Of a stretch of 64,000 bases of DNA, positions 31,208 to 64,000 are shown in pieces. Below the pieces are notes generated by a model that saw nothing but the letters and a program-made list of their open reading frames with translations, did no database searches and was not told the DNA's origin. The stretch covers positions 248,001 to 312,000 of IMG/VR virus record IMGVR_UViG_3300032782_000001; one strand, written 5' to 3'. Both the position numbers and the translations under genes were made by a program. Within the stretch, counting starts at the first letter, position 1. The number at the start of each line of letters is the position of its first letter.

Positions 31208-31540
31208 TCACGAACCGCGACGACTACGACGGGACTTCTTGGGCTCCATTCCCACGTCAGTCGAGCTGGATGACTCGCCAGACTCCATAGACGGAGCATC
31301 ATCAGACGATGAATCATCAAGAGGAGCATCTCCTTCAGAAGGAGGATCCTCTACTTGAGGCTCTCCGTCAGGGACAACGGGCAAATCTTCCGGATCTGCA
31401 TACAACACCACATCCAATGAGTGCTGCGCGTTGTGGAGAACAACATCCTCCTCGGTCAGGACGATGTGAGGAACTTCGACTCCCTTATAGTTCGGCATTT
31501 GGCACCTACCGATCGGTGAATCGGAAAAAAGGTCGCTCAC
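31208..31540 (-). CDS. Small acidic hypothetical protein
   Basis: Asp/Glu/Ser-rich with a basic C-terminus; ATGA overlap with the actin-like gene. Confidence 0.5.
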   Translation of the reverse strand: MSDLFSDSPIGRCQMPNYKGVEVPHIVLTEEDVVLHNAQHSLDVVLYADPEDLPVVPDGEPQVEDPPSEGDAPLDDSSSDDAPSMESGESSSSTDVGMEPKKSRRSRRGS

Positions 31541-40092: not shown

Positions 40093-40334
40093 AATTCCAC
40101 GAATGGAAAGACACTGGGATCAGAGCCACCGATTTGCGCTCCTTCGGACGGTCGAAAAAGAAAATGTCCCGGTACGAGTGCACGAAATGTGGACTCGTGA
40201 TGAACATTTCAGATGTCGATATTCAAATCGAAAAGAAAAACCCCGGGCATATCCACACCGTCGCTAAGGAAACAGTTCAGTCTGATTTCCAAGACTGTGA
40301 TCTCACAATCGTGGCTATGGTGATGAAGACTTAG
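40089..40334 (+). CDS. Small CxxC protein with divergent VMKT tag
   Basis: CTKC...DCDLTIVAMVMKT*; GTGA overlap with the ligase gene. Confidence 0.6.
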   Translation: MKFHEWKDTGIRATDLRSFGRSKKKMSRYECTKCGLVMNISDVDIQIEKKNPGHIHTVAKETVQSDFQDCDLTIVAMVMKT

Positions 40335-41824: not shown

Positions 41825-41839
41825 TTGTCTTCCATCGAA

Positions 41840-45044: not shown

Positions 45045-45052
45045 GCCTAACG

Positions 45053-46057: not shown

Positions 46058-46058
46058 A

Positions 46059-46586
46059 CTACGCCTTGTAACAATCGACGTGGAACTCCCAGAAGACACC
46101 TGGGTTTGTGTTCCCTCTGAAGGAAAAATTAGTATAACCGTATTTCTCCAGAAGTTTTTGCATGGTTTCCCGGGTGAAACCCTGACAATGCTTATCAAAT
46201 TGTTCAAATAAATCGCCGTGTAGGGATCCCTGTTCGCCCCAAATGAGTTCACTCAGCATGGGATTGCTGGGGTCTCGAATGAATCGTGACATGACTTCAG
46301 CCATGTCAACCTCCACAATGTGAAGAAGACCACCAGGCGCCATAACACGATGAATGTCTGCCATGACGCGGTCGTGATATTTCGGCGGCAAATGAAGCAT
46401 CAAGAACCCTGCATACACTTCTATAACAGAATAATCTGGATAAGGAATAGCATCCGTCCGAGCGTCCCAGAGAACATCGCACTCGCAATCGGAATTTGGC
46501 CATTTCTTGACTACGTCAAGATTGACCCATCCACCACCAGTGAAATGAGTAGTACCACAAGCCAGATTGAGGCGGATGTCGGTCAC
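46059..46586 (-). CDS. Class I SAM-dependent methyltransferase (type-11-like)
   Basis: LNLACG..GWVNLD, IPYPDYSV, RVMAPGG. Confidence 0.8.
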   Translation of the reverse strand: MTDIRLNLACGTTHFTGGGWVNLDVVKKWPNSDCECDVLWDARTDAIPYPDYSVIEVYAGFLMLHLPPKYHDRVMADIHRVMAPGGLLHIVEVDMAEVMSRFIRDPSNPMLSELIWGEQGSLHGDLFEQFDKHCQGFTRETMQKLLEKYGYTNFSFRGNTNPGVFWEFHVDCYKA

Positions 46587-47623
46587 AAGAACTCCTCATA
46601 AATAACTCTGAGTTCTTCCGCATGAGACTTGGCCCAAGATAAAACCCTGGACGTACCCATTTCCACGTTCACAACCGGAGCCCACTTTGTAATTGTAGAA
46701 AATTTCTGATGATTCGTAATGAAGATACTGTCTTCATGTCGGCGACCGGGACCATAAGATGTAGATAAAGGCTTTCCATGAATCTTTTGGATTAAGTCCA
46801 CAGCTTCGCAGACGCTCAATGAATTCTGGATACCTCCGCCGATATTGTAAACATTCCCTTGGAGTTCACGGATATTGGAAAATGAGGCCCACACCGCGGA
46901 AGCAACGTCATCAGAAAAGAGCATGTCTCTGGTTTGGAAACCGCTGCCTTGGATTTCCAAAGTCCGTCCTAAAGCAGCAGAAATACAGAACCAAGTTAGC
47001 CAACCATGACGGGGTCCATGACAAGGTGCATCCCCATATAGATTGGAACACCGAAGAGTAGTCACAGGTAAATCATATGTGCGACCATAAGCCATAACCA
47101 AGGCAGTCTGAGCCATTTTGGAAGCCGCGTATGGCTCATCAGGCTCGAGAAGACATGTTTCATCGATCCCACCGGAAAAACGACCCTCCAAAACAAATCG
47201 CTTTCCATGGATGTGCGATGGTAGATCATGAACTCTATACGGCTTCACACTTGAAAGCATGACTGTAGGTGGAACCGAGGTTCTCATTTTTCTCATTGCC
47301 TCGAGGATATGTCTCGAGGCATTCACATTACTCATCCAATCATCGTGAGGATCTTCAGCACTATGAGGGATACCGGTATGAGCTGCTGCGTGGAGAACGA
47401 AATCGTGACTTCGAAGTAAGGACTCAAAGTCAGAATTTTCGACACGCTGTTTAAGGATCGTTACAAGTTCTCCGTAGGATGAATACAAAACGTCAGACAT
47501 CCACAGATTCCGCGGTTCCTCAGCGTGATCTACTACAGTGACCATGTGACCGGATTGAGCAGCAAGTTCCACGAACCTACTACCTACAACCCCGAGGCCG
47601 CCAGTGACGAGATACCGCATCAA
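46583..47623 (-). CDS. NAD-dependent sugar epimerase/dehydratase, CDP-paratose/tyvelose 2-epimerase-like
   Basis: YLVTGGLGVVGS, PYAASK (YxxxK), GWLTWF, QTRDMLF..DV, YNIGGG..NSLS. Confidence 0.8.
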   Translation of the reverse strand: MMRYLVTGGLGVVGSRFVELAAQSGHMVTVVDHAEEPRNLWMSDVLYSSYGELVTILKQRVENSDFESLLRSHDFVLHAAAHTGIPHSAEDPHDDWMSNVNASRHILEAMRKMRTSVPPTVMLSSVKPYRVHDLPSHIHGKRFVLEGRFSGGIDETCLLEPDEPYAASKMAQTALVMAYGRTYDLPVTTLRCSNLYGDAPCHGPRHGWLTWFCISAALGRTLEIQGSGFQTRDMLFSDDVASAVWASFSNIRELQGNVYNIGGGIQNSLSVCEAVDLIQKIHGKPLSTSYGPGRRHEDSIFITNHQKFSTITKWAPVVNVEMGTSRVLSWAKSHAEELRVIYEEFL

Positions 47624-50600
47624 GTAAGCCCCTTATATTTGGGGACGATATTGAGACGGACTTCATCCAATACGTCGAACAACATCTTTTCCCACTCTTG
47701 AGCCAGGGAATCCCAGCCAAAGTTATTTTGGGCATAGGAACGAAGAGATTCCCTGTCAGTGTTATCAGGGTTCATCATTGCTCGAACAACTTCGTCGATG
47801 AATCGATTTTGATAGTCAAGGGAAAGCCAGTCGCCAGCTACCATTCGACCCCTAGGGCCAACAGTTTCGTTCAGAGCTGCAATAGGGGAAGTCACCATGC
47901 GGAGACCAGCGGCATGAGCTTCCATTGCAGAAATGCACGAGGTTTCTGAGAACCAAGTTGGGTATGCCCAAACCCCGCTCTTCAGATATTCTTCAGAGAG
48001 CCGAGATTGGCTTACACGACCATGGAAAAAAACTCCGCAGCTCGAATAGTCTTGAAGAAGCTTCTTCAGGCTATTGATGAGGATTTTCTGTCCCGCATCC
48101 GCACAAGCTTCCCAGGTTTGGAATCCGTAGAAAATATGCAGTTCAGCATCCGGGATTCGTTCGCGGACGCGAGGCCAAATCCGGACAGCTACTTCCATTC
48201 CACGATCTGGACTGGAACTATAGACGGCTCTGTGGGGATTACGAAGAATATCTTTATTGAATTTGACTAAATCAATCCCGTTTCTAGTCCGCAACACTTG
48301 TGAAGGATGTAAGTATTGATAAGTATTGAGAACATTTCCTTTATGCCAATCTGATAGGCACAGCATTTTATCGATCTTAAGAGCTCGTTCATGAGTCAAA
48401 GCGCCGCCACAATGAATGTCATGGACCCAGCATAGAGTAACACGGCGGCGGACGTTATGAGATGCATCCACAGCTTCGGGCTTACGTGACGTAATCAAAA
48501 CATCACAAGAAAGATCTTTGTATTTGGCAGCATCCAAATACTCCACGCCATCGAATTTTCCTTCCAAACCGTTCACGCAATCACCGAAAACTCTAATTCG
48601 ATGACCCATTCCTTGGAGCCTACGAGACATCTCAATCACTGCTGTTTCGGATCCTCCAATCCCGTTAATGGACGCAGTCAGAGGATTCCAGGGCTCCACT
48701 CCGCGACCGACGTAAAAAATAACGTCAAGCTTGGGCTGAGGGGACTCCAAAATAGATACAGATGTCGATTGAACTTCAGAAGCCGTATCAGGCCATCGAC
48801 CATGAGCACAAATAGATGCTTGTGAATGAATAGGAATGGGTTGTTCCGATTGATCGATAGGGATTACTGATCCCACAACGTGGGAAAGACCAACAGCCTG
48901 CATGTCAGCAATCACTTCTGACATGATCGGTGCACGTACATGTTCACGGGGCTTCGGATCATTCCAGGATTCATGGAACGGGACACAAACTCCTTGACAC
49001 CACGAACCACGAGGAGTGCTAACGACTAAAAGACCTCCAGGATTCAATAAGGAGACAGCGGTTTTTAAAATCGTGGTAGGGACGGCTTCATGTTCGTAAA
49101 CTTCGAACAAAATGACGATGTCATATTTATTAGGGAAGCCTTCCGGAAGAGGATCCCGGCCAAAAAGACAAACCCCATGACGAGCTCCAGTGTGGAATTC
49201 TGAAGCCTTGGCATTAGCAATATCGATGACATTTGGAGATGAATCAACACCCCATGTCTCATGACCCACGAGACCGATTCGATTTGTAACCCATCCATCC
49301 ATGCATCCAATATCAAGAATACGAAGCAGTTGTTTCTTCTCTGATTTGATCAAATCGAGAAGATAGTTGTATCGAGCGAATTGTCCGTAAGCAGGACGAA
49401 TTTCTTGGGGGAGAGGAACGGCTTCCTTCTCCAATTTATAGTTACTGTAAATCTTTCGGTATGCATCAGGATCGTCCATGTGAGCCAACATGGAGTCCAC
49501 TCTAGATCGCATCGTGCGTACGTCTTCGTGATCCCTAATCTTCCAAGGAAGAGATTGAACAAGAGCACGCGCCGCCAACACTTCATCATGAAGGAGAAGT
49601 TGCTTGTAAAGCAACTTCGTCATATTCAGAATTACTTCTGATGAAAGTTCGTCAGGTGCTGTATCAATAGAAATGTCATTGGGAATAATGTGACCAGACG
49701 ACATGGGAGAATGAGCAGAAGGAATATTGACAGGAGAAGGAACTGGAAGCTTTCCAGCTATAGCATCCAAGACCAATTTTTGGACCTCGGAATTTACCAC
49801 TCCCATGTTGACTAATTCAGTGAATCCTAGCTCTACCTTCCGCTTGGCGAGATGTTCCTCATAAAGACGTTTGTTTTGAAGAAGCCCAGCGTCATTTGGC
49901 CGGACGCTAAGAGCGTTATTTACACTCTTCAAGGCATTCTCAACATCCCCGATGCTATTCAAAGCAAGATTCATGAATTGATGAACTTCAAACTCCCGCT
50001 CGAGAGGATTAACGAAAAGAATAGTCTTGGTAGGAGGTAGAGATAATCCAATGCGGAAGAAGTGAATGGCCCTTTCCCAATTCCTGCGAGACCGAGCCCC
50101 GCCACGTTGCGCAAGAAAGTAAAAACTTTTACCGAGAGAAAAATATGCTTCGGACCAACCTTCTCTGATCGTAAGTGCCTTAGTTGCCCATTCAATTGAC
50201 GTTTCGTAATCACCAATCGACTGATAATGCTCTGCTACTTTCAGACAAGAAAGAAATCGTTCGTCGTCCCAGTCAGAAAGTTCAATATATCGCTTGTGGA
50301 AATTAATGGCGTTACCGATATCGCCAACATTCCCATACTCCAATCCAAGATAATAAAGTTGACGAACGTCGCTTTCGCCGTGTTTCGCGTAGTGAGCCTT
50401 AAGAATACGAAGATTCCTTCCCGGCTCAGGAACTTTCTTGGAAAAAATCTTCTTATGGACCATTCGGACTTTATCCGAATGGTGTTTCAAGGTATCTTGA
50501 CGTTGCGGATTCAGAATTTCATGAATCGGTCCGTACCATCGGAAAGCTTCTTTAGGAGAACAAAGTCGTTCTCGTTCTTGAATGCAAGTTACGTTTCCGA

Positions 50601-50988
50601 ATTCATCGTGTGAATATTCGTATGGAAAAAAGATAAGCGTTGGAATAGAATGTCGAGATTTATCGAATTCCCCAACCAAATTTTCTAAATTTTCAGCACC
50701 AACGACTACGTCGTCGCCGTCCACCCATAAAACCCATGGTTGGGTAGCTAAATCAAAGCTTCTTTGCCTCGCTGCTGAAAAGTCAGCTATGAGACCATCC
50801 GAATCGTTGCAAGCTGAGAACGATTCGAATTTATCAGCGTATCGACGCGCGATTTCAGGTGTGTTATCAGTCGATCCAGTGTCGACAATAACAATTTCCG
50901 TCACGAAAGGACGGATAGAACGAAGGCAAGCCTCAAGGTTTGCCTCCTCATTCTTGACAATAAGACACGCAGAGATAGGTGCCGTCAC
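47620..50988 (-). CDS. Multidomain glycosyltransferase: GT2 + TPR + methyltransferase + GT4-like
   Basis: ISACLIVKNEE..L, VDTGSTD, DFSAARQ, VDGDD (GT2); TPR-like LYYLGLEY / EAYFSLG; ILDIGCMDG (MTase); VYSSSPDRGM and ETSCISAMEA (GT-B). Confidence 0.9.
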   Translation of the reverse strand: MTAPISACLIVKNEEANLEACLRSIRPFVTEIVIVDTGSTDNTPEIARRYADKFESFSACNDSDGLIADFSAARQRSFDLATQPWVLWVDGDDVVVGAENLENLVGEFDKSRHSIPTLIFFPYEYSHDEFGNVTCIQERERLCSPKEAFRWYGPIHEILNPQRQDTLKHHSDKVRMVHKKIFSKKVPEPGRNLRILKAHYAKHGESDVRQLYYLGLEYGNVGDIGNAINFHKRYIELSDWDDERFLSCLKVAEHYQSIGDYETSIEWATKALTIREGWSEAYFSLGKSFYFLAQRGGARSRRNWERAIHFFRIGLSLPPTKTILFVNPLEREFEVHQFMNLALNSIGDVENALKSVNNALSVRPNDAGLLQNKRLYEEHLAKRKVELGFTELVNMGVVNSEVQKLVLDAIAGKLPVPSPVNIPSAHSPMSSGHIIPNDISIDTAPDELSSEVILNMTKLLYKQLLLHDEVLAARALVQSLPWKIRDHEDVRTMRSRVDSMLAHMDDPDAYRKIYSNYKLEKEAVPLPQEIRPAYGQFARYNYLLDLIKSEKKQLLRILDIGCMDGWVTNRIGLVGHETWGVDSSPNVIDIANAKASEFHTGARHGVCLFGRDPLPEGFPNKYDIVILFEVYEHEAVPTTILKTAVSLLNPGGLLVVSTPRGSWCQGVCVPFHESWNDPKPREHVRAPIMSEVIADMQAVGLSHVVGSVIPIDQSEQPIPIHSQASICAHGRWPDTASEVQSTSVSILESPQPKLDVIFYVGRGVEPWNPLTASINGIGGSETAVIEMSRRLQGMGHRIRVFGDCVNGLEGKFDGVEYLDAAKYKDLSCDVLITSRKPEAVDASHNVRRRVTLCWVHDIHCGGALTHERALKIDKMLCLSDWHKGNVLNTYQYLHPSQVLRTRNGIDLVKFNKDILRNPHRAVYSSSPDRGMEVAVRIWPRVRERIPDAELHIFYGFQTWEACADAGQKILINSLKKLLQDYSSCGVFFHGRVSQSRLSEEYLKSGVWAYPTWFSETSCISAMEAHAAGLRMVTSPIAALNETVGPRGRMVAGDWLSLDYQNRFIDEVVRAMMNPDNTDRESLRSYAQNNFGWDSLAQEWEKMLFDVLDEVRLNIVPKYKGLT

Positions 50989-51005: not shown

Positions 51006-51923
51006 TCACGTCATTTGAGAGTATGAAGAATAAGGATCAATGCACTGCCCACGGAAACTTGCATTCGTATTGGGCGATGCAGTGAAGTTCCCAGAGATGG
51101 TCGTATGATTCGTTTCCATGGTCGCGAGGGCTCCCGAAGATCCAGTCCAGTAAGACTGATTCCCGAGGCCTGAAGCAGTCTCGGATCCACAGAAAAGACC
51201 AAAGTTCTCCGCTTCCCCTGTCGTGGAAGCATAATTGAACCAGTTCTGGAACATACTGGTTTGCGTAGTTGCATTATTGGAATAACAAGCAACAGCTACG
51301 AAATCAGCGCAGTCCATTAGATTCAACCCTTCAAGTTGATTCGGGCCGCTATTGTATGAGAACGAAAGTGCCGCCGAATTCCCGTCTGCAAGCCACTGCG
51401 TTGCGAAACAGCCGACAGGCATGCTAAGGACGCGTTTCGCGGCCAACATCAAATCACAAAGCCCAATGGGCTCAGTAGTCGTGTAACCCGACATCGTCCA
51501 GTATTCCACATCGAAAATGAGGCCGTCGAAAGCGCTACCGCCATTGGTGGTCTGCGCCGTGGATAGCATGTTATACGAGGCAATGTGACGAATGATGTTA
51601 TTCATCACCCATTGCTGATTATGTCCCCAGTCAGTGTTCCCAGCGAGAGCATAGACCCGAATGCCAGAAAGATGAGCGAAATGAATGAATTTCTGGACAG
51701 TTGAAACGTGGCCAGTCGACCAGTTACCACCGCCTAGATATCCCCACATATCAAGAAACAACAGGTTTACACCTTGCGATGCGCACCAGTTGAGAAGATT
51801 CTGCATCTTGGTATCCGTCGAGAGCGGATCTCCCGAGGAACCGGCCGTCCCACACCACACAAACATGGCGCGGTCAAGATTAGAATTGGGCGGAACGGGA
51901 ACCGCAACAGATGAGACAGTCAT
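51006..51923 (-). CDS. TIM-barrel glycoside-hydrolase-like protein
   Basis: GIRVYALAG, FDGLIFDVEY (GH18-like DG...D.E). AAGGAG RBS before ATG 51923. Confidence 0.5.
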   Translation of the reverse strand: MTVSSVAVPVPPNSNLDRAMFVWCGTAGSSGDPLSTDTKMQNLLNWCASQGVNLLFLDMWGYLGGGNWSTGHVSTVQKFIHFAHLSGIRVYALAGNTDWGHNQQWVMNNIIRHIASYNMLSTAQTTNGGSAFDGLIFDVEYWTMSGYTTTEPIGLCDLMLAAKRVLSMPVGCFATQWLADGNSAALSFSYNSGPNQLEGLNLMDCADFVAVACYSNNATTQTSMFQNWFNYASTTGEAENFGLFCGSETASGLGNQSYWTGSSGALATMETNHTTISGNFTASPNTNASFRGQCIDPYSSYSQMT

Positions 51924-51952
51924 GGCAAACTCCTTCGATTTCAACCGCTTGA

Positions 51953-52789: not shown

Positions 52790-52791
52790 GA

Positions 52792-53760
52792 TTAATACTC
52801 GTAGTACCCAAATCCACCAAAAAATGAATTAGAACTAGAAGCAGCATCTTGTTGGACGTAAAGAGTAATCCTAGCTGGACCAGAAACTGCAGCAGGAGTG
52901 GAATCGAACGTGAAATCTTGATTTCCCCCAGCGTTCACTCGCAACTGTGGGGCAAACGTGATTTCCGCTTGAGAAGGGGAAGAAGTTGGGAACGCCTTTC
53001 GAATAGTGACGGAGCCGTTACTGCTGCCTTTGCTGCCTCCGTGGATCGTCACTACATAAGCTGTGTGATTTGCACGAACATAATGATGACACCAATTCGT
53101 TTGGTTGTCGCCCGGAGCAATAGTGCCAATAGTGCCACCGCTGCCAGCGGTGCCAACAAAAAGATTGATAGTACCGACGTTCCCTCCGGCAGATCCGACT
53201 TGAACGACGGTCATCTTTTCAATGAAACAAATATCTGTAGCGATGGTGTCTACGGGCGTTGTCCCGTTGAGCGTGACAGTCTCCGTTTCCAGATTCGTGA
53301 GAGTGGAATCGTAGTAAGTAATGAGAACTGTGCGAGCACCAGTCCCAGCTGAAGCATCATTCGCGCTAGAAGACGAGATAGAACGCTGGGCTCCAGTAGA
53401 CTGCTCGTTATAAAGAGTAGCACGACATGCAACAATTGAAGGATCGGAAGTGCTTACATAGCCGGGAATGTAGACTGCTTGAGGAGAAAGAGAACCATTG
53501 GCAGTAGATTGGTAGTTATTTTCAAAATCAGACTTATCGGAATCGTTTTGAGCTTGAGAATATCCGCCAGAAATGATGCCATCTGGAACCGTTCCTTTCC
53601 AGATCGTGCAGATATTCGCTTCAGGTCCATTGTAAAAATAAATCGTATATTTTAATCCATCATCGTCGTATTGGACGATTCCGCCCTTGGATATGTTAAC
53701 ATTCTTCCAAGCAGTCCATGCGTAGAACCTCTGTGTAAACTGGGGAGCGATGGAAATCAT
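52792..53760 (-). CDS. Virion decoration/fibre-associated protein, paralogue 2
   Basis: Same C-terminal domain; different N-terminus. Confidence 0.6.
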   Translation of the reverse strand: MISIAPQFTQRFYAWTAWKNVNISKGGIVQYDDDGLKYTIYFYNGPEANICTIWKGTVPDGIISGGYSQAQNDSDKSDFENNYQSTANGSLSPQAVYIPGYVSTSDPSIVACRATLYNEQSTGAQRSISSSSANDASAGTGARTVLITYYDSTLTNLETETVTLNGTTPVDTIATDICFIEKMTVVQVGSAGGNVGTINLFVGTAGSGGTIGTIAPGDNQTNWCHHYVRANHTAYVVTIHGGSKGSSNGSVTIRKAFPTSSPSQAEITFAPQLRVNAGGNQDFTFDSTPAAVSGPARITLYVQQDAASSSNSFFGGFGYYEY

Positions 53761-53763
53761 AGA

Positions 53764-55500
53764 TCACTGCTCATAGAAATCAAAGCCACCGGAAAAGGTG
53801 ACTGTGTTACTACTAAATGGGTTAACCCATAACTGAATACGAGCAGGGCCAACCACCTGAATTGGCGTACCATAATTCCGAGTAATCTCACTGCTCTGTC
53901 CGAACAAATAAAGAGCGTCAGACACCTGTTTGTCAGGAGAAGTCGTAGAGCTCAGATCCTGTGCCCGAAGAGTAAAAACCCCTCCTTGAGAAATGCCGGA
54001 TGAATTACTACCAATACTGATTCCAGTGATATAGCAAGTCTTACCGGAAGGAACATAATGGAGTCCCAGATACACCGTGTTGTCCGTTGCATTCATCGTC
54101 ATGATGGTCGCTCCGGTACCAGCAGTAGCTGCTTTCAAAGTAATCGATCCGACGTTTGAACCCGTACTGCCGACGGAGATTACTTCGATCTTCTCTACGT
54201 AGCAAATAGTAGTCGAGACCGTATTCACAGCCGTAGTGCCATTCATAGCCACTACTTCAGTATTCGGACCAACCCCGGCAGAAGTGTAGTATGTAATTTT
54301 AACTTGTCGGGCGCCAGTTCCGGCAGACGTGTCATTCGCACTCGATGAGACAATGGATCGTTGGGCGTTAGAAGTCTGCTCTGTTAAAGTAGTCCTACGA
54401 ACAACAACATTTCCGGTATTGGTAAGAACCACATCTCCTGTAACAAATCCGGCAGTAGTGGCCGAAGCACTAGCTGGTGCTATAACGACACGACCGGTCG
54501 TATCTGTAAGAAGTGCGCGAAGGGTGCTCCCGTCACTTCCACCAACCTGAGCAACAGACGGCGGAAGTGCTCCCGTTATACCAGACTGACCGGCGAAAAG
54601 AACAGAATTATCATAAATTAAACTAGAACGAAGGGAACAGGAAGCTGTCCCGGAAGTGAACGCAGATACTCGGACTCGGGCATGTGAAGCTCCGCCCGCC
54701 CCAACAATTGTTCTAGATGTAGCAGTGTTATTGGATGTAAAAACAATACTGGAAACCTTATTATCGGTAGTTGGATCATCAAAGAATGTAGTAACCCAAG
54801 TCGTTCCACCATCAAATGATACTTCAGGAACGATGGTCCCAATCAAAGTTCCGGCAGAAAGTTGGAATCCAATACTAGAATGACCCGAGAGAGGAACTTG
54901 AACGTTAGCATTTGCGGCATTCAAACTCCCATCATTCAAAGAATCAGGAGTTTGAATTGAAAGGACTCCACCCGTAGGGACTCCGGCGGTTCCGACGCCT
55001 TGAATGGAAAGAATGCCTCCAGTAGGTCCTGTCGGATTCCCAAATCCTTGTACGCTTACAGGTCCTGTAATACCAACAGCTCCAAGAGGAGCAACAGCTC
55101 CCGTAATTCCAACTGCATTGAGTCCAGTAACTCCAACATAACCGGTGACACCTACCGGACCTGTGATTCCAACAGCACCCTTTAAAGCAACTGGACCAGT
55201 AATGCCTACGGCATTCAGACCAGTAATCCCAACATAACCGGTGACACCAACTGGACCCGTAATTCCAACAGCGCCCTTTAAAGCGACTGGTCCAGTAATT
55301 CCTACGGCGTTAAGCCCGGTAACTCCAACATAACCGGTGACACCTACCGGACCTGTAATTCCGGCGACGACGGATACGGGATACGAACCAGTCTGACCTT
55401 GAACTGTCATCACCCCACCAGTGGGTGATGGGGCACCGGGGGTGCCCTGGCCCTGGTCCACGAAAATAGGAGCAGGAGCGGCAATGATTACGGCCGACAT
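53764..55500 (-). CDS. Virion decoration/fibre-associated protein, paralogue 3, with GITGPV repeats
   Basis: Same C-terminal domain plus three 32-aa repeats. Confidence 0.6.
   Translation of the reverse strand: MSAVIIAAPAPIFVDQGQGTPGAPSPTGGVMTVQGQTGSYPVSVVAGITGPVGVTGYVGVTGLNAVGITGPVALKGAVGITGPVGVTGYVGITGLNAVGITGPVALKGAVGITGPVGVTGYVGVTGLNAVGITGAVAPLGAVGITGPVSVQGFGNPTGPTGGILSIQGVGTAGVPTGGVLSIQTPDSLNDGSLNAANANVQVPLSGHSSIGFQLSAGTLIGTIVPEVSFDGGTTWVTTFFDDPTTDNKVSSIVFTSNNTATSRTIVGAGGASHARVRVSAFTSGTASCSLRSSLIYDNSVLFAGQSGITGALPPSVAQVGGSDGSTLRALLTDTTGRVVIAPASASATTAGFVTGDVVLTNTGNVVVRRTTLTEQTSNAQRSIVSSSANDTSAGTGARQVKITYYTSAGVGPNTEVVAMNGTTAVNTVSTTICYVEKIEVISVGSTGSNVGSITLKAATAGTGATIMTMNATDNTVYLGLHYVPSGKTCYITGISIGSNSSGISQGGVFTLRAQDLSSTTSPDKQVSDALYLFGQSSEITRNYGTPIQVVGPARIQLWVNPFSSNTVTFSGGFDFYEQ
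55075..55362 (-). repeat. Three tandem 96-bp (32-aa) repeats
   Basis: GITGPVGVTGYVG(V/I)TGLNAVGITG(P/A)VA(LK/PL)GAV x3. Confidence 0.85.
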
Positions 55501-55503
55501 AAA

Positions 55504-58500
55504 TTAGACGTCCCTCGTCATGGAGTATGACGTCAATCTGTTACCCGAATAGGTGTAGTTAATGGTAACCTGAGACACGATCGTCACCCCATCTGCGGCA
55601 TAAACCTTCCGAACCTCGGTCGTGAGCTTGTTGCCCATATATGTATAATTAATCTGCTTCAGCAAGCTATTATCAGAATGGCGCCTCCATTGTTCCTGAA
55701 TGATATTATTTCCAGAATAAGTATTGGAATAATCGTTGGAAGGTGCTACAGGATCTGCCGCAAGCAAAAGGTCGCTCGGACCGGTGGGACCAGTTGCGCC
55801 CTGGACTCCAGTTGCGCCTTGTGGACCGGTCGCACCCTGCGGTCCGGTTGGACCCGTGACACCTAGCGGTCCAGTTGGACCCGTGGCCCCTGTGACTCCG
55901 GGAGATCCTTGAATACCTTGAGGGCCAATGGGACCAGTTGCACCCGTGACACCCGGTGAGCCTTGTGGACCGATTGGACCCGTAGCTCCAGTGACTCCAG
56001 GAGAACCTTGCGGGCCTGTTGATCCTTGAGAACCAGTTGCACCAGTGACACCCGGTGATCCTTGAGGACCTATGGGACCGGTTGCCCCAGTAATACCTTG
56101 AATTCCAGTGGCGCCTTGTGGTCCAGTTGCTCCTGTAATTCCTGGAGATCCTTGCGGACCAACTGGACCAGTTGCACCAGTAACACCGGTGACACCCGGA
56201 GATCCCTGTGTCCCTTGAACACCAGTCGCACCTCGCGGGCCGGTGGGACCGGTTGCACCCGTGACTCCAGGAGATCCCTGCGTTCCCTGAGGACCAGTAA
56301 ATCCAGTGACACCCGGAGATCCATGCGTCCCTTGAATACCAGTCGCACCCTGGGGACCCGTCGCACCTGTGACTCCAGGAGACCCTTGAGGCCCGGTGGC
56401 TCCGGTTACGCCTGTAACTCCAGGAGAGCCTTGAGGACCAGTTGCTCCAGTGACGCCGGGAGACCCTTGAGGACCAATAGGACCTGTAAATCCAGTAACA
56501 CCAGGGGATCCTTGCGTTCCTTGAGGCCCAATCGCACCTTGAGGCCCAGTGGGACCAATGGGACCAGTAACTCCAGGGGATCCTTGGACACCTGTCGCAC
56601 CTTGAGGGCCAGTTGGACCCGTTGCTCCGGGGGATCCTTGCGGGCCTGTTGCACCAGTAACTCCAGGGGATCCTTGGATTCCTTGAGGACCCGTAGGACC
56701 CGTGGCTCCAGTAACCCCAGGAGATCCTTGTGGCCCAGTTGCACCTGTGACTCCGGTGATTCCAGGAGAGCCTTGGGGCCCAGTTGCACCGGTAACGCCC
56801 GGGGACCCTTGAATGCCTTGTGCGCCAGTAGCGCCGGTGACACCAGGAGATCCTTGGGGACCAGTTGCGCCTTGAGGCCCTGTCGCTCCGGTTACACCAG
56901 GAGAACCTTGAATTCCCTGAGGACCAGTTGCACCAGTAACGCCGTCAGCACCAGTTGATCCTTGCGGACCGGTCGCTCCAGTGATGCCTGGAGGCCCTTG
57001 TGGCCCCGTGGCTCCAGTGACTCCGGTGACACCAGGAGATCCTTGGGGACCAATTGCACCCGTGGCTCCAGTGACTCCGGGAGATCCTTGTGGTCCAGTG
57101 GATCCAGTGACTCCTGGTGAACCTTGCGTACCTTGAGAACCGGTTGCACCTTGTGGTCCTGTGGGTCCAGTTGCTCCGGTAACACCATCAACTCCAGTTG
57201 CACCCTGTGGTCCAGTTGCACCAGTAACCCCCGGCGATCCTTGCGTTCCTTGAGGACCGGTAGCACCAGTAACCCCCGGCGATCCTTGCGTTCCTTGAGG
57301 ACCGGTAGCACCCGTGTTCCCTGGAGAACCTTGCGGACCAGCTGGCCCTGTGGCGCCTGTAACACCAGGTGATCCTTGAATTCCTTGCGGACCAGTTGCA
57401 CCAGTAACTCCAGGACTTCCTTGCGGACCAGTGGCCCCCGTGACACCATCTGCGCCAGTGGCACCCTGAGGCCCTGTTGCACCTGTAACTCCGGGAGATC
57501 CTTGTGGGCCGGTGGAGCCTTGCGGCCCCGTTGGACCCGTGGCTCCAGTAATTCCGGGTGAACCTTGTGCGCCTTGCGGACCGGTCGGGCCAGTAAAACC
57601 GGTGAATCCAGGCGAGCCCTGGTCTCCTTGTGGACCTGTAGCTCCAGTGACGCCAGGGCTACCTTGAGGTCCAGTGGGCCCTGTTGCACCTGTAACCCCG
57701 GGGGATCCTTGAGGTCCAGTGGGACCGGTAAAACCTGTGATTCCAGGAGACCCTTGAACACCTTGAGGTCCGGTTGGCCCTGTGGCGCCAGTCGCACCTT
57801 GCGGGCCTGTGACGCCGGTGAACCCAGGTGATCCTTGAGGACCAGTTGCACCAGTGACTCCTGGAGATCCTTGCGGTCCAATTGGACCCGTCGCACCGGT
57901 GAATCCAGGCGAACCCTGATCACCTTGTGGGCCCGTTGGGCCTGTGGCCCCCGTGACTCCAGGCGATCCTTGATCGCCCTGGGGACCAGTTGGACCCGTC
58001 GCTCCTGGAGATCCTTGCCCACCTTGAGGACCAGTGGGCCCTGTGGTGCCGGTGATTCCAGGAGAACCCTGTGGACCTTGCGGACCAGTTGGCCCGGTCG
58101 CGCCAGTAACTCCTGGAGATCCTTGTTCCCCTTGAGGCCCCGTAGGACCGGTCGAGCCCGTGACTCCAGGAGAACCTTGGATTCCCTGCGGGCCGGTTGC
58201 ACCAGTAACACCATCGGCGCCAGTCGCTCCAGTAACCCCTGGGGATCCTTGAGTACCCTGAGGCCCGGTCGATCCCGTGACTCCGGTAACACCTGGAGAC
58301 CCTTGGACTCCTTGGGGACCCGTCGGCCCTGTAGCTCCAGTGACTCCATCAGCTCCGGTTGCACCTTGAGACCCGGTAGAACCTGTAACGCCCGGTGATC
58401 CTTGTGGACCGATCGGACCGGTTGCTCCAGTGACGCCAGGGCTACCTTGAGAACCAACTGGACCGGTTACTCCTGGAGACCCTTGTCCTCCTTGAGGACC

Positions 58501-61500
58501 TGTAGGACCTGTCGCTCCAGTAACACCATCCGCACCAGTGGGTCCTTGAGGACCTGTCGCGCCAGTAGCCCCCGTTACACCGTCCGCGCCAGTGGGTCCT
58601 TGAGGCCCCGTGAGACCCGTCGCGCCAGGAGAGCCTTGAATCCCCTGCGGGCCAGTCGCTCCAGTAATGCCGGGTGAACCTTGATCGCCTTGCGGTCCAG
58701 TTGGACCCGTAGACCCGGTTACACCAGGAGAGCCTTGGATGCCTTGGAAACCTGTGGCGCCTTGCGGACCTGTGGGACCAGTCGCGCCAGTAACTCCATC
58801 GATTCCAGTTGCACCTTGTGGACCAGTTGCTCCAGTAACACCTGGAGATCCTTGACTACCTTGCGGACCCGTTGGCCCGGTGGCACCTGTAATCCCCGGG
58901 GACCCTGGATTTCCTTGCGGACCCGTGGGACCAGTAACACCTGGTGATCCTTGAGACCCTGTAGACCCTTCAGGACCAGTTGCACCGGTAACTCCATCTG
59001 CTCCAGTCGCGCCCTGCGGGCCTGTGGGACCAGTGGCACCAGTAACACCTGGCGATCCTTGGATTCCTTGAGGACCCGTAGGACCCGTTGCTCCATCAGC
59101 ACCGGTAACGCCTTGAGGACCTGTCGCGCCGGTAATTCCGGGCGAGCCTTGTGGACCTGTAACACCGGGAGACCCCTGCGGGCCAGTTGCACCGGTGACT
59201 CCATCAGCCCCCGTTGAACCTTGCGGGCCCGTAGCGCCTGTTGCTCCAGGTGATCCTTGCGGGCCCGTGACTCCGGTGACTCCAGGAGATCCTTGTGGAC
59301 CGGTAGGCCCGGTTGAACCGGTAACTCCGTCCGCACCAGTTGCACCTTGGGGACCCGTGACTCCGGTGACTCCGGTAACACCTGGAGAACCTTGTACTCC
59401 TTGGGGCCCAGTAGGGCCAGTAGCACCGGTGACACCATCAGCTCCGGTTGGCCCTTGAGGTCCAGTGGCTCCGGTTACTCCGGGCGATCCTTGCTGTCCT
59501 TGAGGACCGGTCGGGCCTGTAGTACCGTCAACTCCCGTGGCACCTTGTGGACCAATTGGACCTGTAAATCCAGTAACACCAGGGGATCCTTGCGGGCCAG
59601 TTGCACCAGTAACCCCAGGTGAACCTTGGACTCCTTGAGGACCAGTGGCTCCAGTGAATCCTGGAGAACCCTGTTCGCCTTGCGGACCAGTTGATCCAGT
59701 GACGCCAGTAACTCCATCGGCGCCTGTAGCACCTTGGGGTCCAGTGGCCCCCGTGACCCCTGGAGATCCTTGCGGGCCAATTGGGCCTGTGGCCCCCGTG
59801 ACTCCAGGCGATCCTTGATCACCTTGTGGGCCTGTGGGCCCAGTAGCTCCTGTGACGCCAGGCGATCCTTGATCGCCTTGAGGACCTGTGGAGCCAGTAA
59901 ATCCTGGAGACCCTTGCGGGCCCGTAGCTCCGGTTGAACCAGGAGAACCTTGTGGCCCAGTTGCACCAGTTACTCCAGGAGATCCTTGAATTCCTTGAGG
60001 ACCCGTAGAACCGGTTGCACCGGTGACTCCATCGGCACCCGTTGCGCCTTGAGGACCAGTTGGGCCCGTCGCACCAGTGACTCCAGGTGATCCTTGATCG
60101 CCTTGAGGACCCGTTGGTCCGGTGACTCCAGTTACTCCGGGCGATCCTTGGTATCCTTGGGGACCCGTTGCACCTGTAACTCCATCAACCCCCGTTGCGC
60201 CTTGCGGACCAGTAGCCCCCGTGACTCCAGGAGACCCCTGTTCGCCTTGTGGGCCCGTTGGACCTGTCGCACCAGTGATACCTGGGGACCCTGAATCTCC
60301 TTGCGGACCAGTTGGACCCGTAAATCCAGTAACCCCAGGTGATCCCTGTGGTCCCGTTGCTCCAGTAACTCCAGGTGAACCTTGATCGCCTTGCGGGCCA
60401 GTCGGTCCCGTTGCTCCAGTTAGACCATCTGAACCGGTCGCGCCTTGTGGACCAGTTGCACCAGTGACTCCAGGATTTCCTTGCGGACCAGTTGTACCAG
60501 TGACACCATCAACGCCCGTCGCACCTTGAGGTCCCGTTGGACCCGTGGCACCGGTAACGCCGTCCGCTCCAGTCGCGCCTTGCGGACCCGTGGGTCCGGT
60601 AGTTCCAGTAACACCAGGCGAACCTTGATCACCTTGAGGCCCCGTGGCTCCCGTGGCTCCGGGAGAACCTTGAGGCCCGGTTGCACCGGTTACTCCTGGA
60701 CTACCTTGGACACCTTGAGGACCTGTGAATCCTGTGATGCCTGGCGATCCTTGATTACCTTGAAGACCTGTAGCGCCTTGTGGGCCAGTCGCTCCCGTGA
60801 CTCCGGGCGATCCTTGAGGCCCTGTTGCTCCTTGCGAACCAGTTGGACCAGTTGGACCTTGGGGTCCGGTCGCACCTGGAGAGCCTTGAGGACCAGTAGT
60901 CCCCGGAGATCCTTGAGGACCGGTCGCTCCAGTGACACCGTCCGAGCCAGTTGGGCCAGGAGAACCTTGCGGGCCAGTAGAACCTTGCGGGCCAGTTGCT
61001 CCAGTTACTCCGGGCGATCCTTGAGGTCCGATGGCACCTGTGACGCCGGTAGGTCCAGCAGGACCAGTCGGACCTTGAGGCCCCGGTAAACCTGTGAATC
61101 CACGAGGTCCCGGAGTTCCTTGTTCACCTTGCGGACCCGTGGGCCCAGTAGCCCCCGCAGGACCAGTCGGACCTGTGGATCCCGTGACTCCGGGGGATCC
61201 TTGGATGCCCTGAGGACCTGGAGAACCTTGAGGTCCGGTAGTTCCCACAGGACCAGTTGGACCCGTTGCACCAGTAACCCCAGGTGAACCTTGAACGCCC
61301 TGTGGCCCTGTTACTCCTTGCGGACCCGTGGCACCTTGCGGACCCGTAGGCCCAGCCGAACCTGTAACGCCTTGGGGTCCGGTAGAACCTTGCGGACCCG
61401 TGGCACCTTGCGGACCCGTGGCACCTTGCGGACCCGTCGGTCCCGTGGCACCTTGTGGGCCCACGGGCCCAGTCGAACCTTGAATTCCAGTAACACCTTG

Positions 61501-62778
61501 CGGACCAGTTGGTCCAGTTGGACCAGTCGCGCCTTGGGGTCCCGTGGCTCCTTGTGGACCAGTTGGACCAGTCGCGCCTTGAGACCCAGTGGATCCCTGA
61601 GGACCTGTCGCCCCTTGAGGCCCGGTTGTGCCTGTAGCGCCGCGAGGACCGGTAGGTCCTGTAGAGCCAGTTACACCTTGGAACCCTGTAGCTCCTTGCG
61701 GTCCAGTGACACCTTGCGGACCAGTTGGCCCAATTGATCCAGTAGGACCAGTTGGACCAGTCGCGCCCTGAAGGCCCGTAGCTCCTTGCGGACCCGTAGC
61801 TCCGGTAGTTCCTTGGGCTCCCGTGGGACCTTGGGCTCCCGTGGCACCCTGAGGACCTGTGAAGCCAGGAGAGCCTTGTGGACCCGTCGTCCCTGGGCTT
61901 CCTTGGGGTCCCGTAGCTCCAGTAACTCCTTGGGGACCGGTCGCTCCTTGGGGACCGGTCGCTCCGGTAACTCCTGGATTTCCTTGGGGTCCCTGAAGAC
62001 CAGTTGCACCTCGAGGACCTGGAGTCCCCTGAATGCCCTGATCGCCTTGGGGACCTGTTGTACCCGTTGCGCCGGTAACGCCAGGACTCCCTTGAACCCC
62101 TTGAATACCTTGAAGACCAGTCGCGCCCTGCGGACCCGTTGCGCCAGCAGGACCTGTGGGACCAGTCGCTCCAGTTGATCCTTGAAGACCAGTCGCGCCC
62201 TGCGGACCCGTTGCGCCCTGCGGTCCAGTCGCACCAGTTATTCCCGGTGAACCTTGCGGTCCAGTTGGACCCGTTGCGCCTTGCGGACCCGTTGCGCCTT
62301 GCGGACCCGTTGCGCCGGTAAAGCCAGGTGAACCTTGATCACCTTTCGGACCCGTGGGACCAGTTGCCCCCGTTGATCCTTGTGGACCTGTTGATCCTTG
62401 TGGACCCGTTGGACCTGTTGAACCCTGGATTCCAGTCGCGCCTTGCGGACCGGTCGGTCCCGTCGCCCCATCTGGACCGGTGTTACCCTGGGGACCTATT
62501 GGTCCCGTAGAACCCGGTACACCATCAGCTCCTGTTGTGCCTTGAGGCCCCGTAGGCCCTGTGGGACCAACAGGTCCGATCGAACCGGTAATGCCTTGAA
62601 GACCCGTTGCACCTTGCGGACCCGTAACTCCAGCAGGACCCGTTGCTCCGGTAACACCGTCTATTCCGGTCGGACCTTGGACACCAGTTACCCCCGGCGA
62701 CCCTTGCGGACCTTGGGGGCCCGTAGCTCCAGTCGCCCCAGGATGCCGCGGCGCTCCTCGGGGGTTGTCGATCGACAT
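55504..62778 (-). CDS. Giant collagen-like fibre protein (2424 aa)
   Basis: Residues ~14-2335 are Gly-X-Y ([15 protein letters not shown]). The 89-aa C-terminal domain has two INYTY.GN.L repeats. Confidence 0.92.
55774..62739 (-). repeat. Gly-X-Y coding repeat, including a perfect 45-bp tandem duplication at 57218-57312
   Basis: 9-bp periodicity with diverse codons; gcaccagtaacccccggcgatccttgcgttccttgaggaccggta occurs twice in tandem. Confidence 0.9.
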
Positions 62779-62782
62779 AGGT

Positions 62783-64000
62783 TCAGCTGGAGGCAGTCAA
62801 GGTGATACCGATAGTTCCCGGCGCTCCAGGGACTCCTTTCTCAGCCGCAATTAACCGAACGGTTGTAGTACCTCCGGGGATAGTCACGTAAAGAATGAAA
62901 TTGATCGGATTCCCGTCCAGAGGAGCAGGGCCATCCAAACTCTGAAGAAACATGTCTTGAGAAGAATTCGCCGAGTTGACGATAAGAATGTCATGGTCAA
63001 CTAGAGTTTCCTGGGTTTCTTCCACGCCGTTTCCCCAGAACAGTTTAAAAGTGGCGAACCCATTCGGAGCACCGCGAGTATATGTGATATAGAAAGTAAT
63101 GTGACGAACTCCCCGCGGAATTGCAAAAGGAGGTTGGCTCGTGGTATTCCCGGAAGGAGGAAGAGGCCCCGTTACAAGATGAATTACCCGTGGAATTTCA
63201 AATTGGCAACAAGTGGGATTACTCATCACGACAGGCACCACCGGGATAGTGACACCACAAGGTGCTGAAGGAGCTGAACAAGGCCTATCGCATGCACACG
63301 GGTCGCATGGTGTAGAGCAATCCATGAGTAGTCGAGGAGCAAGAATGACGGGACAATTGGAACAGGGGTCAAAAAAGAACCCGTCACAGAGAATAGGAAC
63401 AAGTGGAGTAAAGGGATTTATTGGATTGATGACAGAGAATCGCATGGACTTCGATTCTAACGGGGAATCTGCGAATGCCATCCATTCCCACGTAACGAGA
63501 TAGTCACCACTGCATACGCATACGTTCCATTGGACAAAATACTCACCCATAGCAGCACGCGTAGCTATGGTCCTTGGAGAAACAGATCTCCCGACCGCAT
63601 CGTAGATAGTCCAGAAAACTGCAAAAGCATCAGCAGGGAGGCCTTCAGGACTCTTCAAGAAAAGAGGCAAGTCCCCGCGACCAAGGAAAGTTCCAGAGAG
63701 GTAAGTAAAACCTCCCCTTTCCGGAATGTCGTTCGGGTTTAAAGGTTCACACGGACCATAACTAGATGGATCTACTACGAAGAATTGTTCAGTGAACTTC
63801 CTCGGTAATTGGCCCGATTCAGGAATTACAGACCACTCGATTCGATAATTCCCATTTTTGACATCGGAATACCAGGGAGCATAATACTCACCTGTCTTGG
63901 CTCGAATGGCAGGCAAATCTTTGCCACTCACTTTGGATCCATCAAAGCCAAACACCGTCCAACGGACGTCAAAGGCATCCTGAGCTTGACCGAGATCGTT
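62783..64000 (-). CDS. Structural protein with repeated Ig-like domains and Cys-rich linker (5' end beyond window)
   Basis: The frame of track ORF 62783..63955 stays open to base 64000 ([18 protein letters not shown]). Two GEY...G.Y...W domains resemble the N-terminus of the 37760 gene. Confidence 0.65.

What the first reader, a model, noticed from the sequence alone, without database searches (positions are those of the whole stretch)
55504..62778. About 770 consecutive Gly-X-Y triplets, more than twice a vertebrate fibrillar collagen helix
Seen: residues 14-2335 (2322 aa, a multiple of 3). I saw no register break, but did not machine-check. Type I collagen has 338 triplets. At about 0.29 nm per residue this gives roughly 650-700 nm, versus roughly 170 nm of tail predicted from the 1130-aa tape measure. 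The N-terminal anchor is only 13 aa and the C-terminal domain 89 aa (two INYTY.GN.L hairpins). A perfect 45-bp tandem duplication at 57218-57312 indicates ongoing length change.
Basis: partly seen in the sequence, partly recalled or inferred. Interest (0 to 1): 0.6.

Follow-up and report, generated by a model that had tools for sequence, protein, structure and literature searches.

The report
Giant uninterrupted collagen fibre gene, huge phage
A 436-kb phage from a wetland encodes a 2424-residue protein that is one unbroken run of 774 collagen triplets, capped by a small trimer-forming beta domain and flanked by fibre-tip and sugar-adding genes. It is most likely a sugar-coated thread about 0.66 micrometres long on the virus particle.

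Summary
The ORF at 55504-62778 (-) encodes 2424 aa, and residues 14-2335 are 774 Gly-X-Y triplets with no register break. The perfect 45-bp tandem duplication is real.

It is not an expanded-repeat artefact. Every 51-mer in the gene is unique, and independent contigs of one wetland run tile most of the 5991 bases laid with 0 differences.

The genome is a complete 436,316-bp huge phage with terminal repeats.

The 89-aa C-terminal domain belongs to an uncurated family of at least 233 clusters, absent from Pfam and PHROGs. It folds into three beta-hairpins (pLDDT 96) and passes a homotrimer test (0.78 vs 0.01). In other phages it ends small proteins of about 170 aa in tail-fibre modules, and the next gene is a conserved partner. 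Here that partner is a 578-aa fibre-tip-like protein with two tandem paralogues, followed by a glycosylation island.

The helix has 32% Pro at X and 50% Thr at Y, but only one Lys-Gly-Asp/Glu triplet.

Best reading: a trimeric, Thr-O-glycosylated collagen tether on the virion. Virion location, glycosylation and helix formation are all inferred.

In my incomplete surveys the longest other uninterrupted runs were 329 (viral) and 393 (metagenomic) triplets. I class it as a new variant of a known kind.

The parts
55504..62778 (-). Whole gene: 2424 aa, 212 kDa, pI 4.05, no Cys
62740..62778 (-). N-terminal 13 aa. The P-R-H-P-G motif resembles the M..TPDR.PG start of 12 of 150 small proteins that carry the same C-terminal domain (a weak lead)
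55774..62739 (-). Collagen-like domain, residues 14-2335, 774 uninterrupted Gly-X-Y. X: Pro 32%, Ala 22%, Ser 17%, Val 16%. Y: Thr 50%, Gln 29%, Pro 13%. 41 acidic and 5 basic residues; one KGD/KGE triplet
57218..57312 (-). Perfect 45-bp tandem duplication (2.1 copies), in frame; the only recent repeat in the gene
55507..55773 (-). C-terminal 89-aa domain ('A1 domain'): three beta-hairpins, YD/Rhs-like sheet, predicted homotrimer through first-strand to last-strand pairing. Uncurated family
53764..55500 (-). 578-aa protein starting 3 nt after the collagen stop. It has the conserved M-S-x-V-I..P-type N-terminus, short interrupted G-X-Y stretches, an all-beta C-terminal domain of about 220 aa, and tail-fibre PHROG hits
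52792..53760 (-). 322-aa paralogue sharing the C-terminal domain of about 220 aa
51986..52789 (-). 267-aa paralogue sharing the C-terminal domain of about 220 aa (phrog_8198)
51006..51944 (-). 312-aa protein, no family hit, in the same tightly packed gene string
47620..50988 (-). 1122-aa GT2 - TPR - SAM methyltransferase - GT1 multidomain enzyme; candidate protein glycosyltransferase
40331..47623 (-). Rest of the glycosylation island: two NAD-dependent sugar epimerase/dehydratases (46583-47623, 44094-45044), an unknown 399-aa protein, two GT1 glycosyltransferases (42964-44130, 41840-42967) and a B12-binding radical SAM enzyme (40331-41824)
62783..64000 (-). Upstream gene (425 aa in the full genome, running past the window end). 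Its stop lies 4 nt before the collagen ATG. No family hit

Best explanation
The gene encodes the shaft of a very long, thin fibre on the particle of a huge phage.

Proposed mechanism:
1. Three chains associate through the C-terminal 89-aa beta-hairpin domain. The three six-stranded sheets join edge to edge into a closed trimer.
2. That trimer sets the register and nucleates a collagen triple helix, which zips from the C-terminus towards the N-terminus through 774 triplets. The result is a flexible thread of about 660 nm.
3. The helix has no hydroxyproline system beside it and almost no salt bridges. I propose it is stabilised and hydrated by O-glycosylation of the 387 Thr at position Y, carried out by the phage's own glycosylation island next door.
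4. The same C-terminal trimer is the docking site for the product of the next gene, the 578-aa fibre-tip-like protein. Its two tandem paralogues would offer alternative tips.
5. The 13-aa N-terminus would be the end fixed to the particle.
6. Function: a long tether that widens the capture radius for host cells or surfaces.

Shown: the sequence pattern, the domain family, its confident fold, and the conserved gene pair.
Predicted: the trimer.
Inferred: triple helix, glycosylation, docking, polarity and virion location.
For: Pattern. 774 unbroken triplets with Pfam Collagen at E 2.7e-63 on the first 400 aa. Peptide-identical 15-mers are only 79% identical in DNA, with 60% of third positions different. 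So the Gly register is held by selection, not by recent copying.

Composition. Pro 32% at X and Thr 50% at Y match the reported Gram-positive bacterial collagen pattern of 31.0% and 48.3% (PMC8968730).

Glycosylation argument. (Gly-Pro-Thr)10 is reported to fold only when Thr is galactosylated (cited in PMC11923368). Only one KGD/KGE triplet is present. The same-strand string continues into a GT2-TPR-methyltransferase-GT1 enzyme, two GT1s, two sugar epimerase/dehydratases and a radical SAM enzyme.

C-terminal domain. 233 clusters at E<=1e-3, almost always at the extreme C-terminus. The model has pLDDT 95.9. The homotrimer ipSAE is 0.78 against a best control of 0.01 in 2 of 3 runs, with partner pLDDT at least 71 and contact agreement at least 11%. 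The tool's mark was reached by 20 of 30 solved homo-pairs and 1 of 23 single chains, roughly calibrated because my own alignment and three copies were used.

Virion context elsewhere. An A1-domain protein has a baseplate-wedge-like N-terminal part. In other contigs its neighbours hit tail-fibre and virion-structural PHROGs, one at E 2.7e-86.

Conserved pair. The A1-domain gene is followed 1-4 nt later by a gene with a similar N-terminus. That gene carries the 578-aa protein's C-terminal domain in the window, L006, L136 and L148.

Position in the genome. The cluster lies between weak capsid and terminase hits and the putative tape measure and Baseplate_J genes, all on one strand.
Against: No proteomic, imaging or expression data exist, and no RNA run holds the gene.

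The gene is about 75 kb from the baseplate module, which has its own 917-aa collagen-like fibre gene. So tail attachment is not implied by position.

A 13-aa N-terminus is very short for an anchor.

Assigning the glycosyltransferases to this substrate rests on adjacency only.

One of the three trimer runs scored 0.01.

Fold matches of the C-terminal domain are at the level common for unmatched models (Z 7.5-8.5).

The two nearest huge-phage relatives found (LR745208, LR756511) lack the domain.
Confidence: 0.55

Rival explanations
1. It is a virion fibre, but a head or neck decoration (a hair-like nap or whiskers) rather than a tail fibre. Many copies would coat the capsid, as BclA coats spores or fibrils coat mimivirus. 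They would serve adhesion, buoyancy or protection rather than receptor search from the baseplate.
For: The cluster lies between the weak capsid hit (genome 347.7-348.6 kb) and the putative tape measure (250-253 kb), about 75 kb from Baseplate_J. The baseplate has its own collagen-like fibre gene. The layout of short N-terminus, Thr-rich collagen, C-terminal beta trimer and adjacent sugar genes parallels BclA (own knowledge; PMC8968730).
Against: In other phages, proteins of the C-terminal domain family sit in tail-fibre or baseplate contexts. The next gene hits tail-fibre PHROGs. The capsid and terminase hits are below the family cut-offs.
Confidence: 0.2
2. It is not part of the virion. It is made during infection and exported or released to alter the host surface or its surroundings, for example as a matrix or adhesive coat or a block to superinfection.
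For: No direct evidence of virion incorporation. Glycosylation islands in phages can also act on host structures. The protein is acidic and Cys-free, like many extracellular fibres.
Against: The 13-aa N-terminus is too short to hold a signal peptide or a lipobox (read from the sequence). The C-terminal domain family and its partner gene sit among virion genes in several unrelated phage contigs.
Confidence: 0.12
3. The Gly-X-Y region is a heavily glycosylated, mucin-like disordered spacer and does not form a triple helix.
For: Unglycosylated (Gly-Pro-Thr)n is reported as random coil (cited in PMC11923368). There are almost no charged pairs, and no prolyl hydroxylase was seen among the window genes scanned.
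Against: A disordered spacer needs no strict period, yet Gly is kept at every third residue over 2322 aa while synonymous sites are nearly saturated. A trimer-forming domain sits at the end where collagen folding starts (PMC11923368).
Confidence: 0.08
4. The length is an assembly artefact: a shorter gene over-expanded, or pieces of several collagen-like genes joined.
For: Short-read metagenome assembly; the gene contains exact repeats of 31 to 50 bp; the only run found may be the source sample; several other collagen-like genes exist in the same genome.
Against: All 51-mers are unique. The pieces carry distinct sequence at a similar depth of 34-49 and match with 0 differences. The frame stays open and in register for 7.3 kb. 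The contig is a closed genome with terminal repeats and CheckV completeness of 100%.
Confidence: 0.05

Closest known systems
BclA, the collagen-like glycoprotein of the Bacillus exosporium nap
   Same: Short N-terminal part, Thr-rich Gly-X-Y region, C-terminal all-beta trimerising domain, and sugar-biosynthesis or transferase genes nearby. Thr glycosylation is thought to stabilise the helix (PMC8968730; own knowledge).
   Different: BclA has tens of triplets against 774 here. Its C-terminal domain is a C1q/TNF-like jelly roll, whereas this one is a three-hairpin YD-like sheet with no Pfam hit. This protein is phage-encoded.
Collagen-like tail-fibre and minor-tail proteins of phages and prophages (E. 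coli EPclA-D, mycobacteriophage minor tail proteins, streptococcal HylP; SPP1 gp12 on capsids)
   Same: Trimeric phage appendages with a Gly-X-Y shaft and non-collagen end domains (PMC3368898, PMC7602432). The neighbouring gene hits 'tail fiber' and 'collagen like minor tail' PHROGs.
   Different: Those shafts are far shorter and usually interrupted. The end domains of the E. coli family gave no Pfam hit here.
Mimivirus collagen-like fibril proteins with virus-encoded glycosylation
   Same: A large virus encodes both collagen-like proteins and its own modifying and glycosylating enzymes (PMC4691112, PMC8968730).
   Different: That virus infects a eukaryote, and its chemistry is hydroxylysine-linked glycosylation. 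Here there is only 1 Lys in the helix, and Thr is the candidate site.
Long uninterrupted collagens: vertebrate fibrillar (about 338 triplets), Trichodesmium erythraeum and white spot syndrome virus collagen (about 383)
   Same: A long perfect Gly-X-Y register (PMC2443231).
   Different: The run here is about twice as long and lacks the charged triplets proposed as folding clamps (PMC11923368). Prokaryotic collagen-like chains of up to about 2000 triplets are reported, but with many interruptions (PMC11923368).
YD/Rhs repeat shells (teneurin, Rhs, Tc toxin TcB-TcC) and DUF3836 proteins
   Same: The C-terminal domain has the Y-x-Y-x-G-N-x-L hairpin motif. Its model superposes on pieces of these sheets (Z 7.5-8.5, rmsd 1.7-3.3 A over 67-77 residues; TM 0.6-0.73).
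   Different: Only three hairpins, with no shell, no toxin and no Pfam RHS_repeat hit. The scores are in the range the tool calls common for unmatched models.

Membership tests
Collagen triple-helix repeat proteins (Pfam PF01391) | Gly at every third residue over long stretches, and a match to the family profile | tested here: met
   774 consecutive triplets; PF01391 at E 2.7e-63 on residues 1-400
Collagen triple-helix repeat proteins (Pfam PF01391) | Three chains form a right-handed triple helix | not testable with these tools
   Only the C-terminal domain was modelled as a trimer; the helix itself needs CD or EM
BclA-type exosporium collagen-like proteins | C-terminal C1q/TNF-like jelly-roll trimerisation domain | tested here: not met
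   No Pfam family at E<=10 other than chance-level rows; the model is a six-stranded three-hairpin sheet
BclA-type exosporium collagen-like proteins | Thr-rich Gly-X-Thr repeats with glycosylation genes nearby | tested here: met
   Thr at 50% of Y positions; glycosyltransferases and sugar epimerases in the same gene string. Glycosylation itself was not tested
E. coli prophage collagen-like tail-fibre proteins (EPcl) | Phage-fibre N-terminal, coiled-coil or C-terminal domains flanking the collagen region | tested here: not met
   Pfam scan of residues 1-400 and 2330-2424 gave only Collagen
Rhs / YD-repeat proteins (Pfam PF05593) | Profile match to the YD repeat | tested here: not met
   No RHS_repeat row at E<=10. 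The nearest Atlas cluster has RHS_repeat in 19% of members at score 0.89, which is a lead only
Rhs / YD-repeat proteins (Pfam PF05593) | Beta-hairpin sheet fold of the YD shell | tested here: inconclusive
   Z 8.1 to teneurin and 7.5 to Rhs, with DUF3836 at 8.5; no Foldseek match at E<=0.001
Uncurated 89-aa C-terminal domain family ('A1 domain', defined here) | Full-length profile match at the extreme C-terminus, with invariant E27, W29, Y43, G62, R87 | tested here: met
   Best hit at E 7.4e-45; 141 clusters at E<=1e-10; alignment A1. Absent from Pfam and PHROGs
Uncurated 89-aa C-terminal domain family ('A1 domain', defined here) | Followed within a few nt by a partner gene with an M-x-x-V-x-x-x-P type N-terminus | tested here: met
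   Window; L135, L136 and L138; L144, L146, L147 and L148. The partner carries the 578-aa protein's C-terminal domain in L006, L136 and L148
Phage tail fibre | Present in the virion and attached to the baseplate or tail tip | not testable with these tools
   Context only: tail-fibre PHROG hits of the neighbour and of neighbours of family members elsewhere

The most novel reading that the evidence does not exclude
This is the longest uninterrupted collagen triple helix yet seen in a virus or microbe, about 0.66 micrometres. It folds without hydroxyproline and without the Lys-Asp/Glu clamps recently proposed as the folding code of long collagens. Instead it relies on dense Thr O-glycosylation by a phage-encoded pathway and on a new three-hairpin trimerisation domain. 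It arose by inserting and expanding a collagen spacer inside a fibre-adaptor protein that is normally about 170 aa.
Probability: 0.3. Interest if true: 0.72.

Novelty: new variant of a known kind. Interest (0 to 1): 0.55.

Why it matters
For collagen biophysics, this is a natural test of how a helix of 774 triplets stays in register and stable with no interruptions, no hydroxyproline and practically no salt bridges. A recent study proposes such salt bridges as the general folding code of long collagens (PMC11923368).

For materials work, it offers a compact 89-aa trimerisation and registration module and a very long, Cys-free, low-charge bacterial-type collagen.

For phage biology, a tether several times longer than the predicted tail would change how far a huge phage can reach for its host. 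It would also add a case of phage-encoded glycosylation of a virion protein.

It also defines a widespread domain and a two-gene fibre module that are missing from Pfam and PHROGs.

Tried and rejected
Searches that found nothing:
- Word search for long relatives carrying the C-terminal domain. This says nothing about shorter kin, which the full HMMER search then found.
- tblastn of the C-terminal region and of residues 1-1200 against the phage collection. The low-complexity filter probably masks the collagen part.
- Megablast of 18 kb of the window against phages.
- Profile search of the PDB by sequence.
- The two nearest huge-phage records, which lack the C-terminal domain and gave no collagen match. 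The tool warns that the second blank shows nothing.
- IMG/VR scan with the single domain. Alignment A1 was too diverse to scan with; the closer alignment A3 found nine small relatives.

Uninformative results:
- Relatives of the 578-aa protein in IMG/VR (L001-L011) have no collagen gene beside them.
- The fold of the shared C-terminal domain of about 220 aa (pLDDT 86.5) matched only generic double beta-sandwich proteins, with TM 0.1-0.25.
- Promoter and terminator scans were at chance level.
- Tail sheath, portal and Terminase_6C profiles found nothing in the genome.
- The low-depth joints in the read lay-out were not accepted as length variants, because their sides are only 20-21 letters.
- One script call returned no answer and was repeated.

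Left out: the animal collagens, human ones included, among the hits. They were not fetched, compared or analysed. Only 49 non-animal hits were measured.

Full report
**What is there**

The ORF at 55504-62778 on the minus strand is the longest in the window and in the whole genome. It translates to 2424 aa. A regex check finds a single run of Gly-X-Y from residue 14 to residue 2335: 774 triplets with no register break.

- Position X is Pro 32%, Ala 22%, Ser 17% and Val 16%.
- Position Y is Thr 50%, Gln 29% and Pro 13%.
- Five triplets ([15 protein letters not shown]) make up 72% of the helix.
- The helix region holds 36 Asp, 5 Glu, 4 Arg, 1 Lys and 1 His, and only one KGD/KGE triplet.
- Gly occupies X twice, at residues 1430 and 1586.
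- The chain is 212 kDa, pI 4.05, without Cys.
- At 0.286 nm per residue, a continuous triple helix would be 664 nm long. This is arithmetic on an untested assumption.

**Is it real?**

The local GC of 62%, against 50% for the genome, follows from Gly, Pro and Ala codons. Tandem Repeats Finder reports many arrays of period 18-99 bp, but at only 63-88% matches apart from a few short arrays.

The longest exact repeat is 50 bp, and it is the perfect 45-bp tandem duplication at 57218-57312. Every 51-mer of the gene is unique.

Pairs of identical 15-residue peptides (328 pairs) are on average only 79% identical in DNA and differ at 60% of third codon positions. So the repeats are old or convergent, and the Gly register is kept by selection.

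One public run, a wetland metagenome, holds 96% of the sampled words. Its independently built contigs cover most of 56674-62296 with 0 differences at depth 34-49. They break where the exact 31-mer repeats listed lie, and almost no depth was laid between about 61400 and 62000.

This argues strongly against an over-expanded repeat. It does not prove the order of the pieces or the copy number of the 45-bp unit. The run may be the source sample, and no long reads were found.

**Whose gene is it?**

The window lies in a single 436,316-bp record with direct terminal repeats and 100% estimated completeness. The standard code gives 95% coding density. A neighbouring actin-like protein matches two published huge-phage genomes. 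Most genes have no family hit. This is a huge phage from a wetland; its host is unknown.

**The C-terminal domain**

The last 89 aa have no Pfam or PHROG match and no PDB relative by sequence. A full HMMER search of 1.84 billion representatives finds 233 proteins at E<=1e-3 and 141 at E<=1e-10. The domain is almost always at the very C-terminus of proteins of 100-300 aa, and only 9 of the best 150 carry any Gly-X-Y run.

With an alignment of 63 members (A1), AlphaFold2 gives a model at pLDDT 95.9: six strands forming three hairpins. The repeated Y-x-Y-x-G-N-x-L motif and the structural neighbours point to a YD-like sheet. Those neighbours are DUF3836, teneurin and Rhs shell pieces (Z 7.5-8.5; TM 0.6-0.73). 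The scores are no better than is common for unmatched models.

Three copies pass the complex test. The median ipSAE is 0.78 against 0.01 for the best control, in 2 of 3 runs, with partner pLDDT at least 71 and contact agreement at least 11%. The tool's mark was reached by 20 of 30 solved homo-pairs and 1 of 23 single chains. The calibration is only rough here, because my own alignment and three copies were used. In the model, the first strand of one copy pairs with the last strand of the next.

That fits a closed trimer placed where collagen folding is known to start, at the C-terminus (PMC11923368).

**Context**

The string is tightly packed on the minus strand. The gaps on either side of the collagen gene are 4 nt and 3 nt, and 3 and 2 nt separate the three paralogues (coordinates). 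In order of transcription it holds:

1. an unknown 425-aa protein;
2. the collagen gene;
3. a 578-aa protein;
4. two paralogues of it, of 322 and 267 aa;
5. an unknown 312-aa protein;
6. a 1122-aa GT2-TPR-methyltransferase-GT1 enzyme;
7. two NAD-dependent sugar epimerase/dehydratases, with an unknown 399-aa protein between them;
8. two GT1 transferases;
9. a B12-binding radical SAM enzyme.

The 578-aa protein has short interrupted Gly-X-Y stretches and hits 'tail fiber' and 'collagen like minor tail' PHROGs. It shares an all-beta C-terminal domain of about 220 aa with its two paralogues and with ORFs in ten IMG/VR contigs.

In unrelated viral contigs, the gene carrying the 89-aa domain is usually small (162-239 aa, no collagen). 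It is followed 1-4 nt later by a gene with a similar N-terminus (M-x-x-V-x-x-x-P). In L006, L136 and L148 that gene carries the same C-terminal domain as the 578-aa protein. Neighbours there hit tail-fibre, baseplate-wedge and virion-structural families, one at E 2.7e-86.

So the giant protein looks like a member of a family of small fibre adaptors into which a collagen spacer of 2322 residues has been inserted and expanded. Its N-terminal P-R-H-P-G resembles the M..TPDR.PG start of 12 small members. That is a weak lead.

In the genome, the cluster lies between weak capsid and terminase hits (about 348 and 362 kb) and the putative tape measure (250-253 kb) and Baseplate_J (227-231 kb), all on one strand. 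It is therefore inside the morphogenesis region but not at the baseplate, which has its own 917-aa collagen-like gene.

**How it most likely works**

The C-terminal domain trimerises, sets the register and nucleates a triple helix that zips towards the N-terminus. The Thr-rich, charge-poor helix is stabilised by O-glycosylation from the adjacent island. The C-terminal trimer docks the 578-aa tip protein or one of its paralogues. The thread serves as a long tether on the particle.

The composition equals the reported Gram-positive pattern of 31% Pro at X and 48% Thr at Y (PMC8968730). (Gly-Pro-Thr)10 is reported to need Thr glycosylation in order to fold (cited in PMC11923368). The TPR module of the large transferase is the kind used to hold protein substrates (own knowledge).

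All of these steps beyond sequence, fold and gene order are inference.

The rivals are a head or neck nap rather than a tail fibre, a non-virion exported protein, a disordered glycosylated spacer, and an assembly artefact. Each is weighed in its own section.

**How unusual is the length?**

The longest run among them was 329.
- A word search of 5.8 billion protein clusters, restricted to 1333-4242 aa, gave 4173 hits. Among the 49 non-animal proteins in the best 120, the longest unbroken run was 393 and the largest total was 483 triplets.
- The literature reports about 338 triplets for fibrillar collagens and about 383 for Trichodesmium and white spot syndrome virus (PMC2443231). It also reports prokaryotic collagen-like chains of up to about 2000 triplets, but with many interruptions (PMC11923368).

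So 774 unbroken triplets is about twice anything I could find. My surveys are samples, however. Short-read assemblies also break such genes: two hits, P0141 and P0156, start inside a Gly-X-Y run, and P0156 lies on a 2.4-kb contig, so they look like fragments of similar genes. No paper in the searchable library describes a collagen-like protein of a huge phage with a linked glycosylation island.

**Verdict**

The kind of thing, a collagen-like phage fibre, is known. The new elements are the unbroken length, the lack of the usual stabilising features, the uncurated trimerising end domain with its conserved partner gene, and the adjacent glycosylation island. Function and location remain inferred.

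Noticed in passing
window 31537-32586 (-): A 349-aa protein matches Pfam PF25216 Volactin, an actin-homologue family described from haloarchaea, at E 4e-70. Homologues occur in two published huge-phage genomes (50% and 31% identity). An actin-like protein in a huge phage may bear on host type or on organisation inside the infected cell.
   Followed up: partly
window 15072-16685 (+); genome 88988-91903 and 91941-92924 (+): Three further collagen-like proteins share an N-terminal domain of about 95 aa ahead of interrupted Gly-X-Y regions. Counting a 917-aa one beside Baseplate_J (genome 223797-226550), the phage carries at least six collagen-like genes.
   Followed up: partly
window 51986-55500 (-): Three tandem paralogues (578, 322 and 267 aa) share an all-beta C-terminal domain of about 220 aa (model pLDDT 86.5) but have different N-terminal parts. 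They may be alternative fibre tips.
   Followed up: partly
window 40331-50988 (-): A phage-encoded glycosylation island: a GT2-TPR-methyltransferase-GT1 fusion of 1122 aa, two GT1s, two sugar epimerase/dehydratases and a B12-binding radical SAM enzyme. This suggests a modified (methylated or deoxy) sugar.
   Followed up: partly
It lies near tape-measure clusters by language-model features (0.95, few shared features).
   Followed up: partly
window 24277-28950 (-): A 1557-aa protein with only a sub-threshold DUF2460 (phage tail family) hit at E 1e-3; otherwise unknown.
   Followed up: no
window 11693-12526 (-) and 13100-14605 (-): An HNH endonuclease (PHROG E 7e-37) and an AAA-family ATPase (Pfam AAA E 1.3e-23) lie next to each other among unknown genes.
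   Followed up: no
window 62779-62830 (-): There is no Shine-Dalgarno-like motif ahead of the collagen ATG, and the upstream gene's stop lies 4 nt before it. This suggests translational coupling or a host that does not use Shine-Dalgarno sites.
   Followed up: no
L134, L135, L136, L138, L144, L146-L148: In many unrelated viral contigs, the gene ending in the 89-aa domain is followed within 1-4 nt by a gene with a conserved M-x-x-V-x-x-x-P N-terminus. This two-gene fibre module is absent from Pfam and PHROGs.
   Followed up: partly
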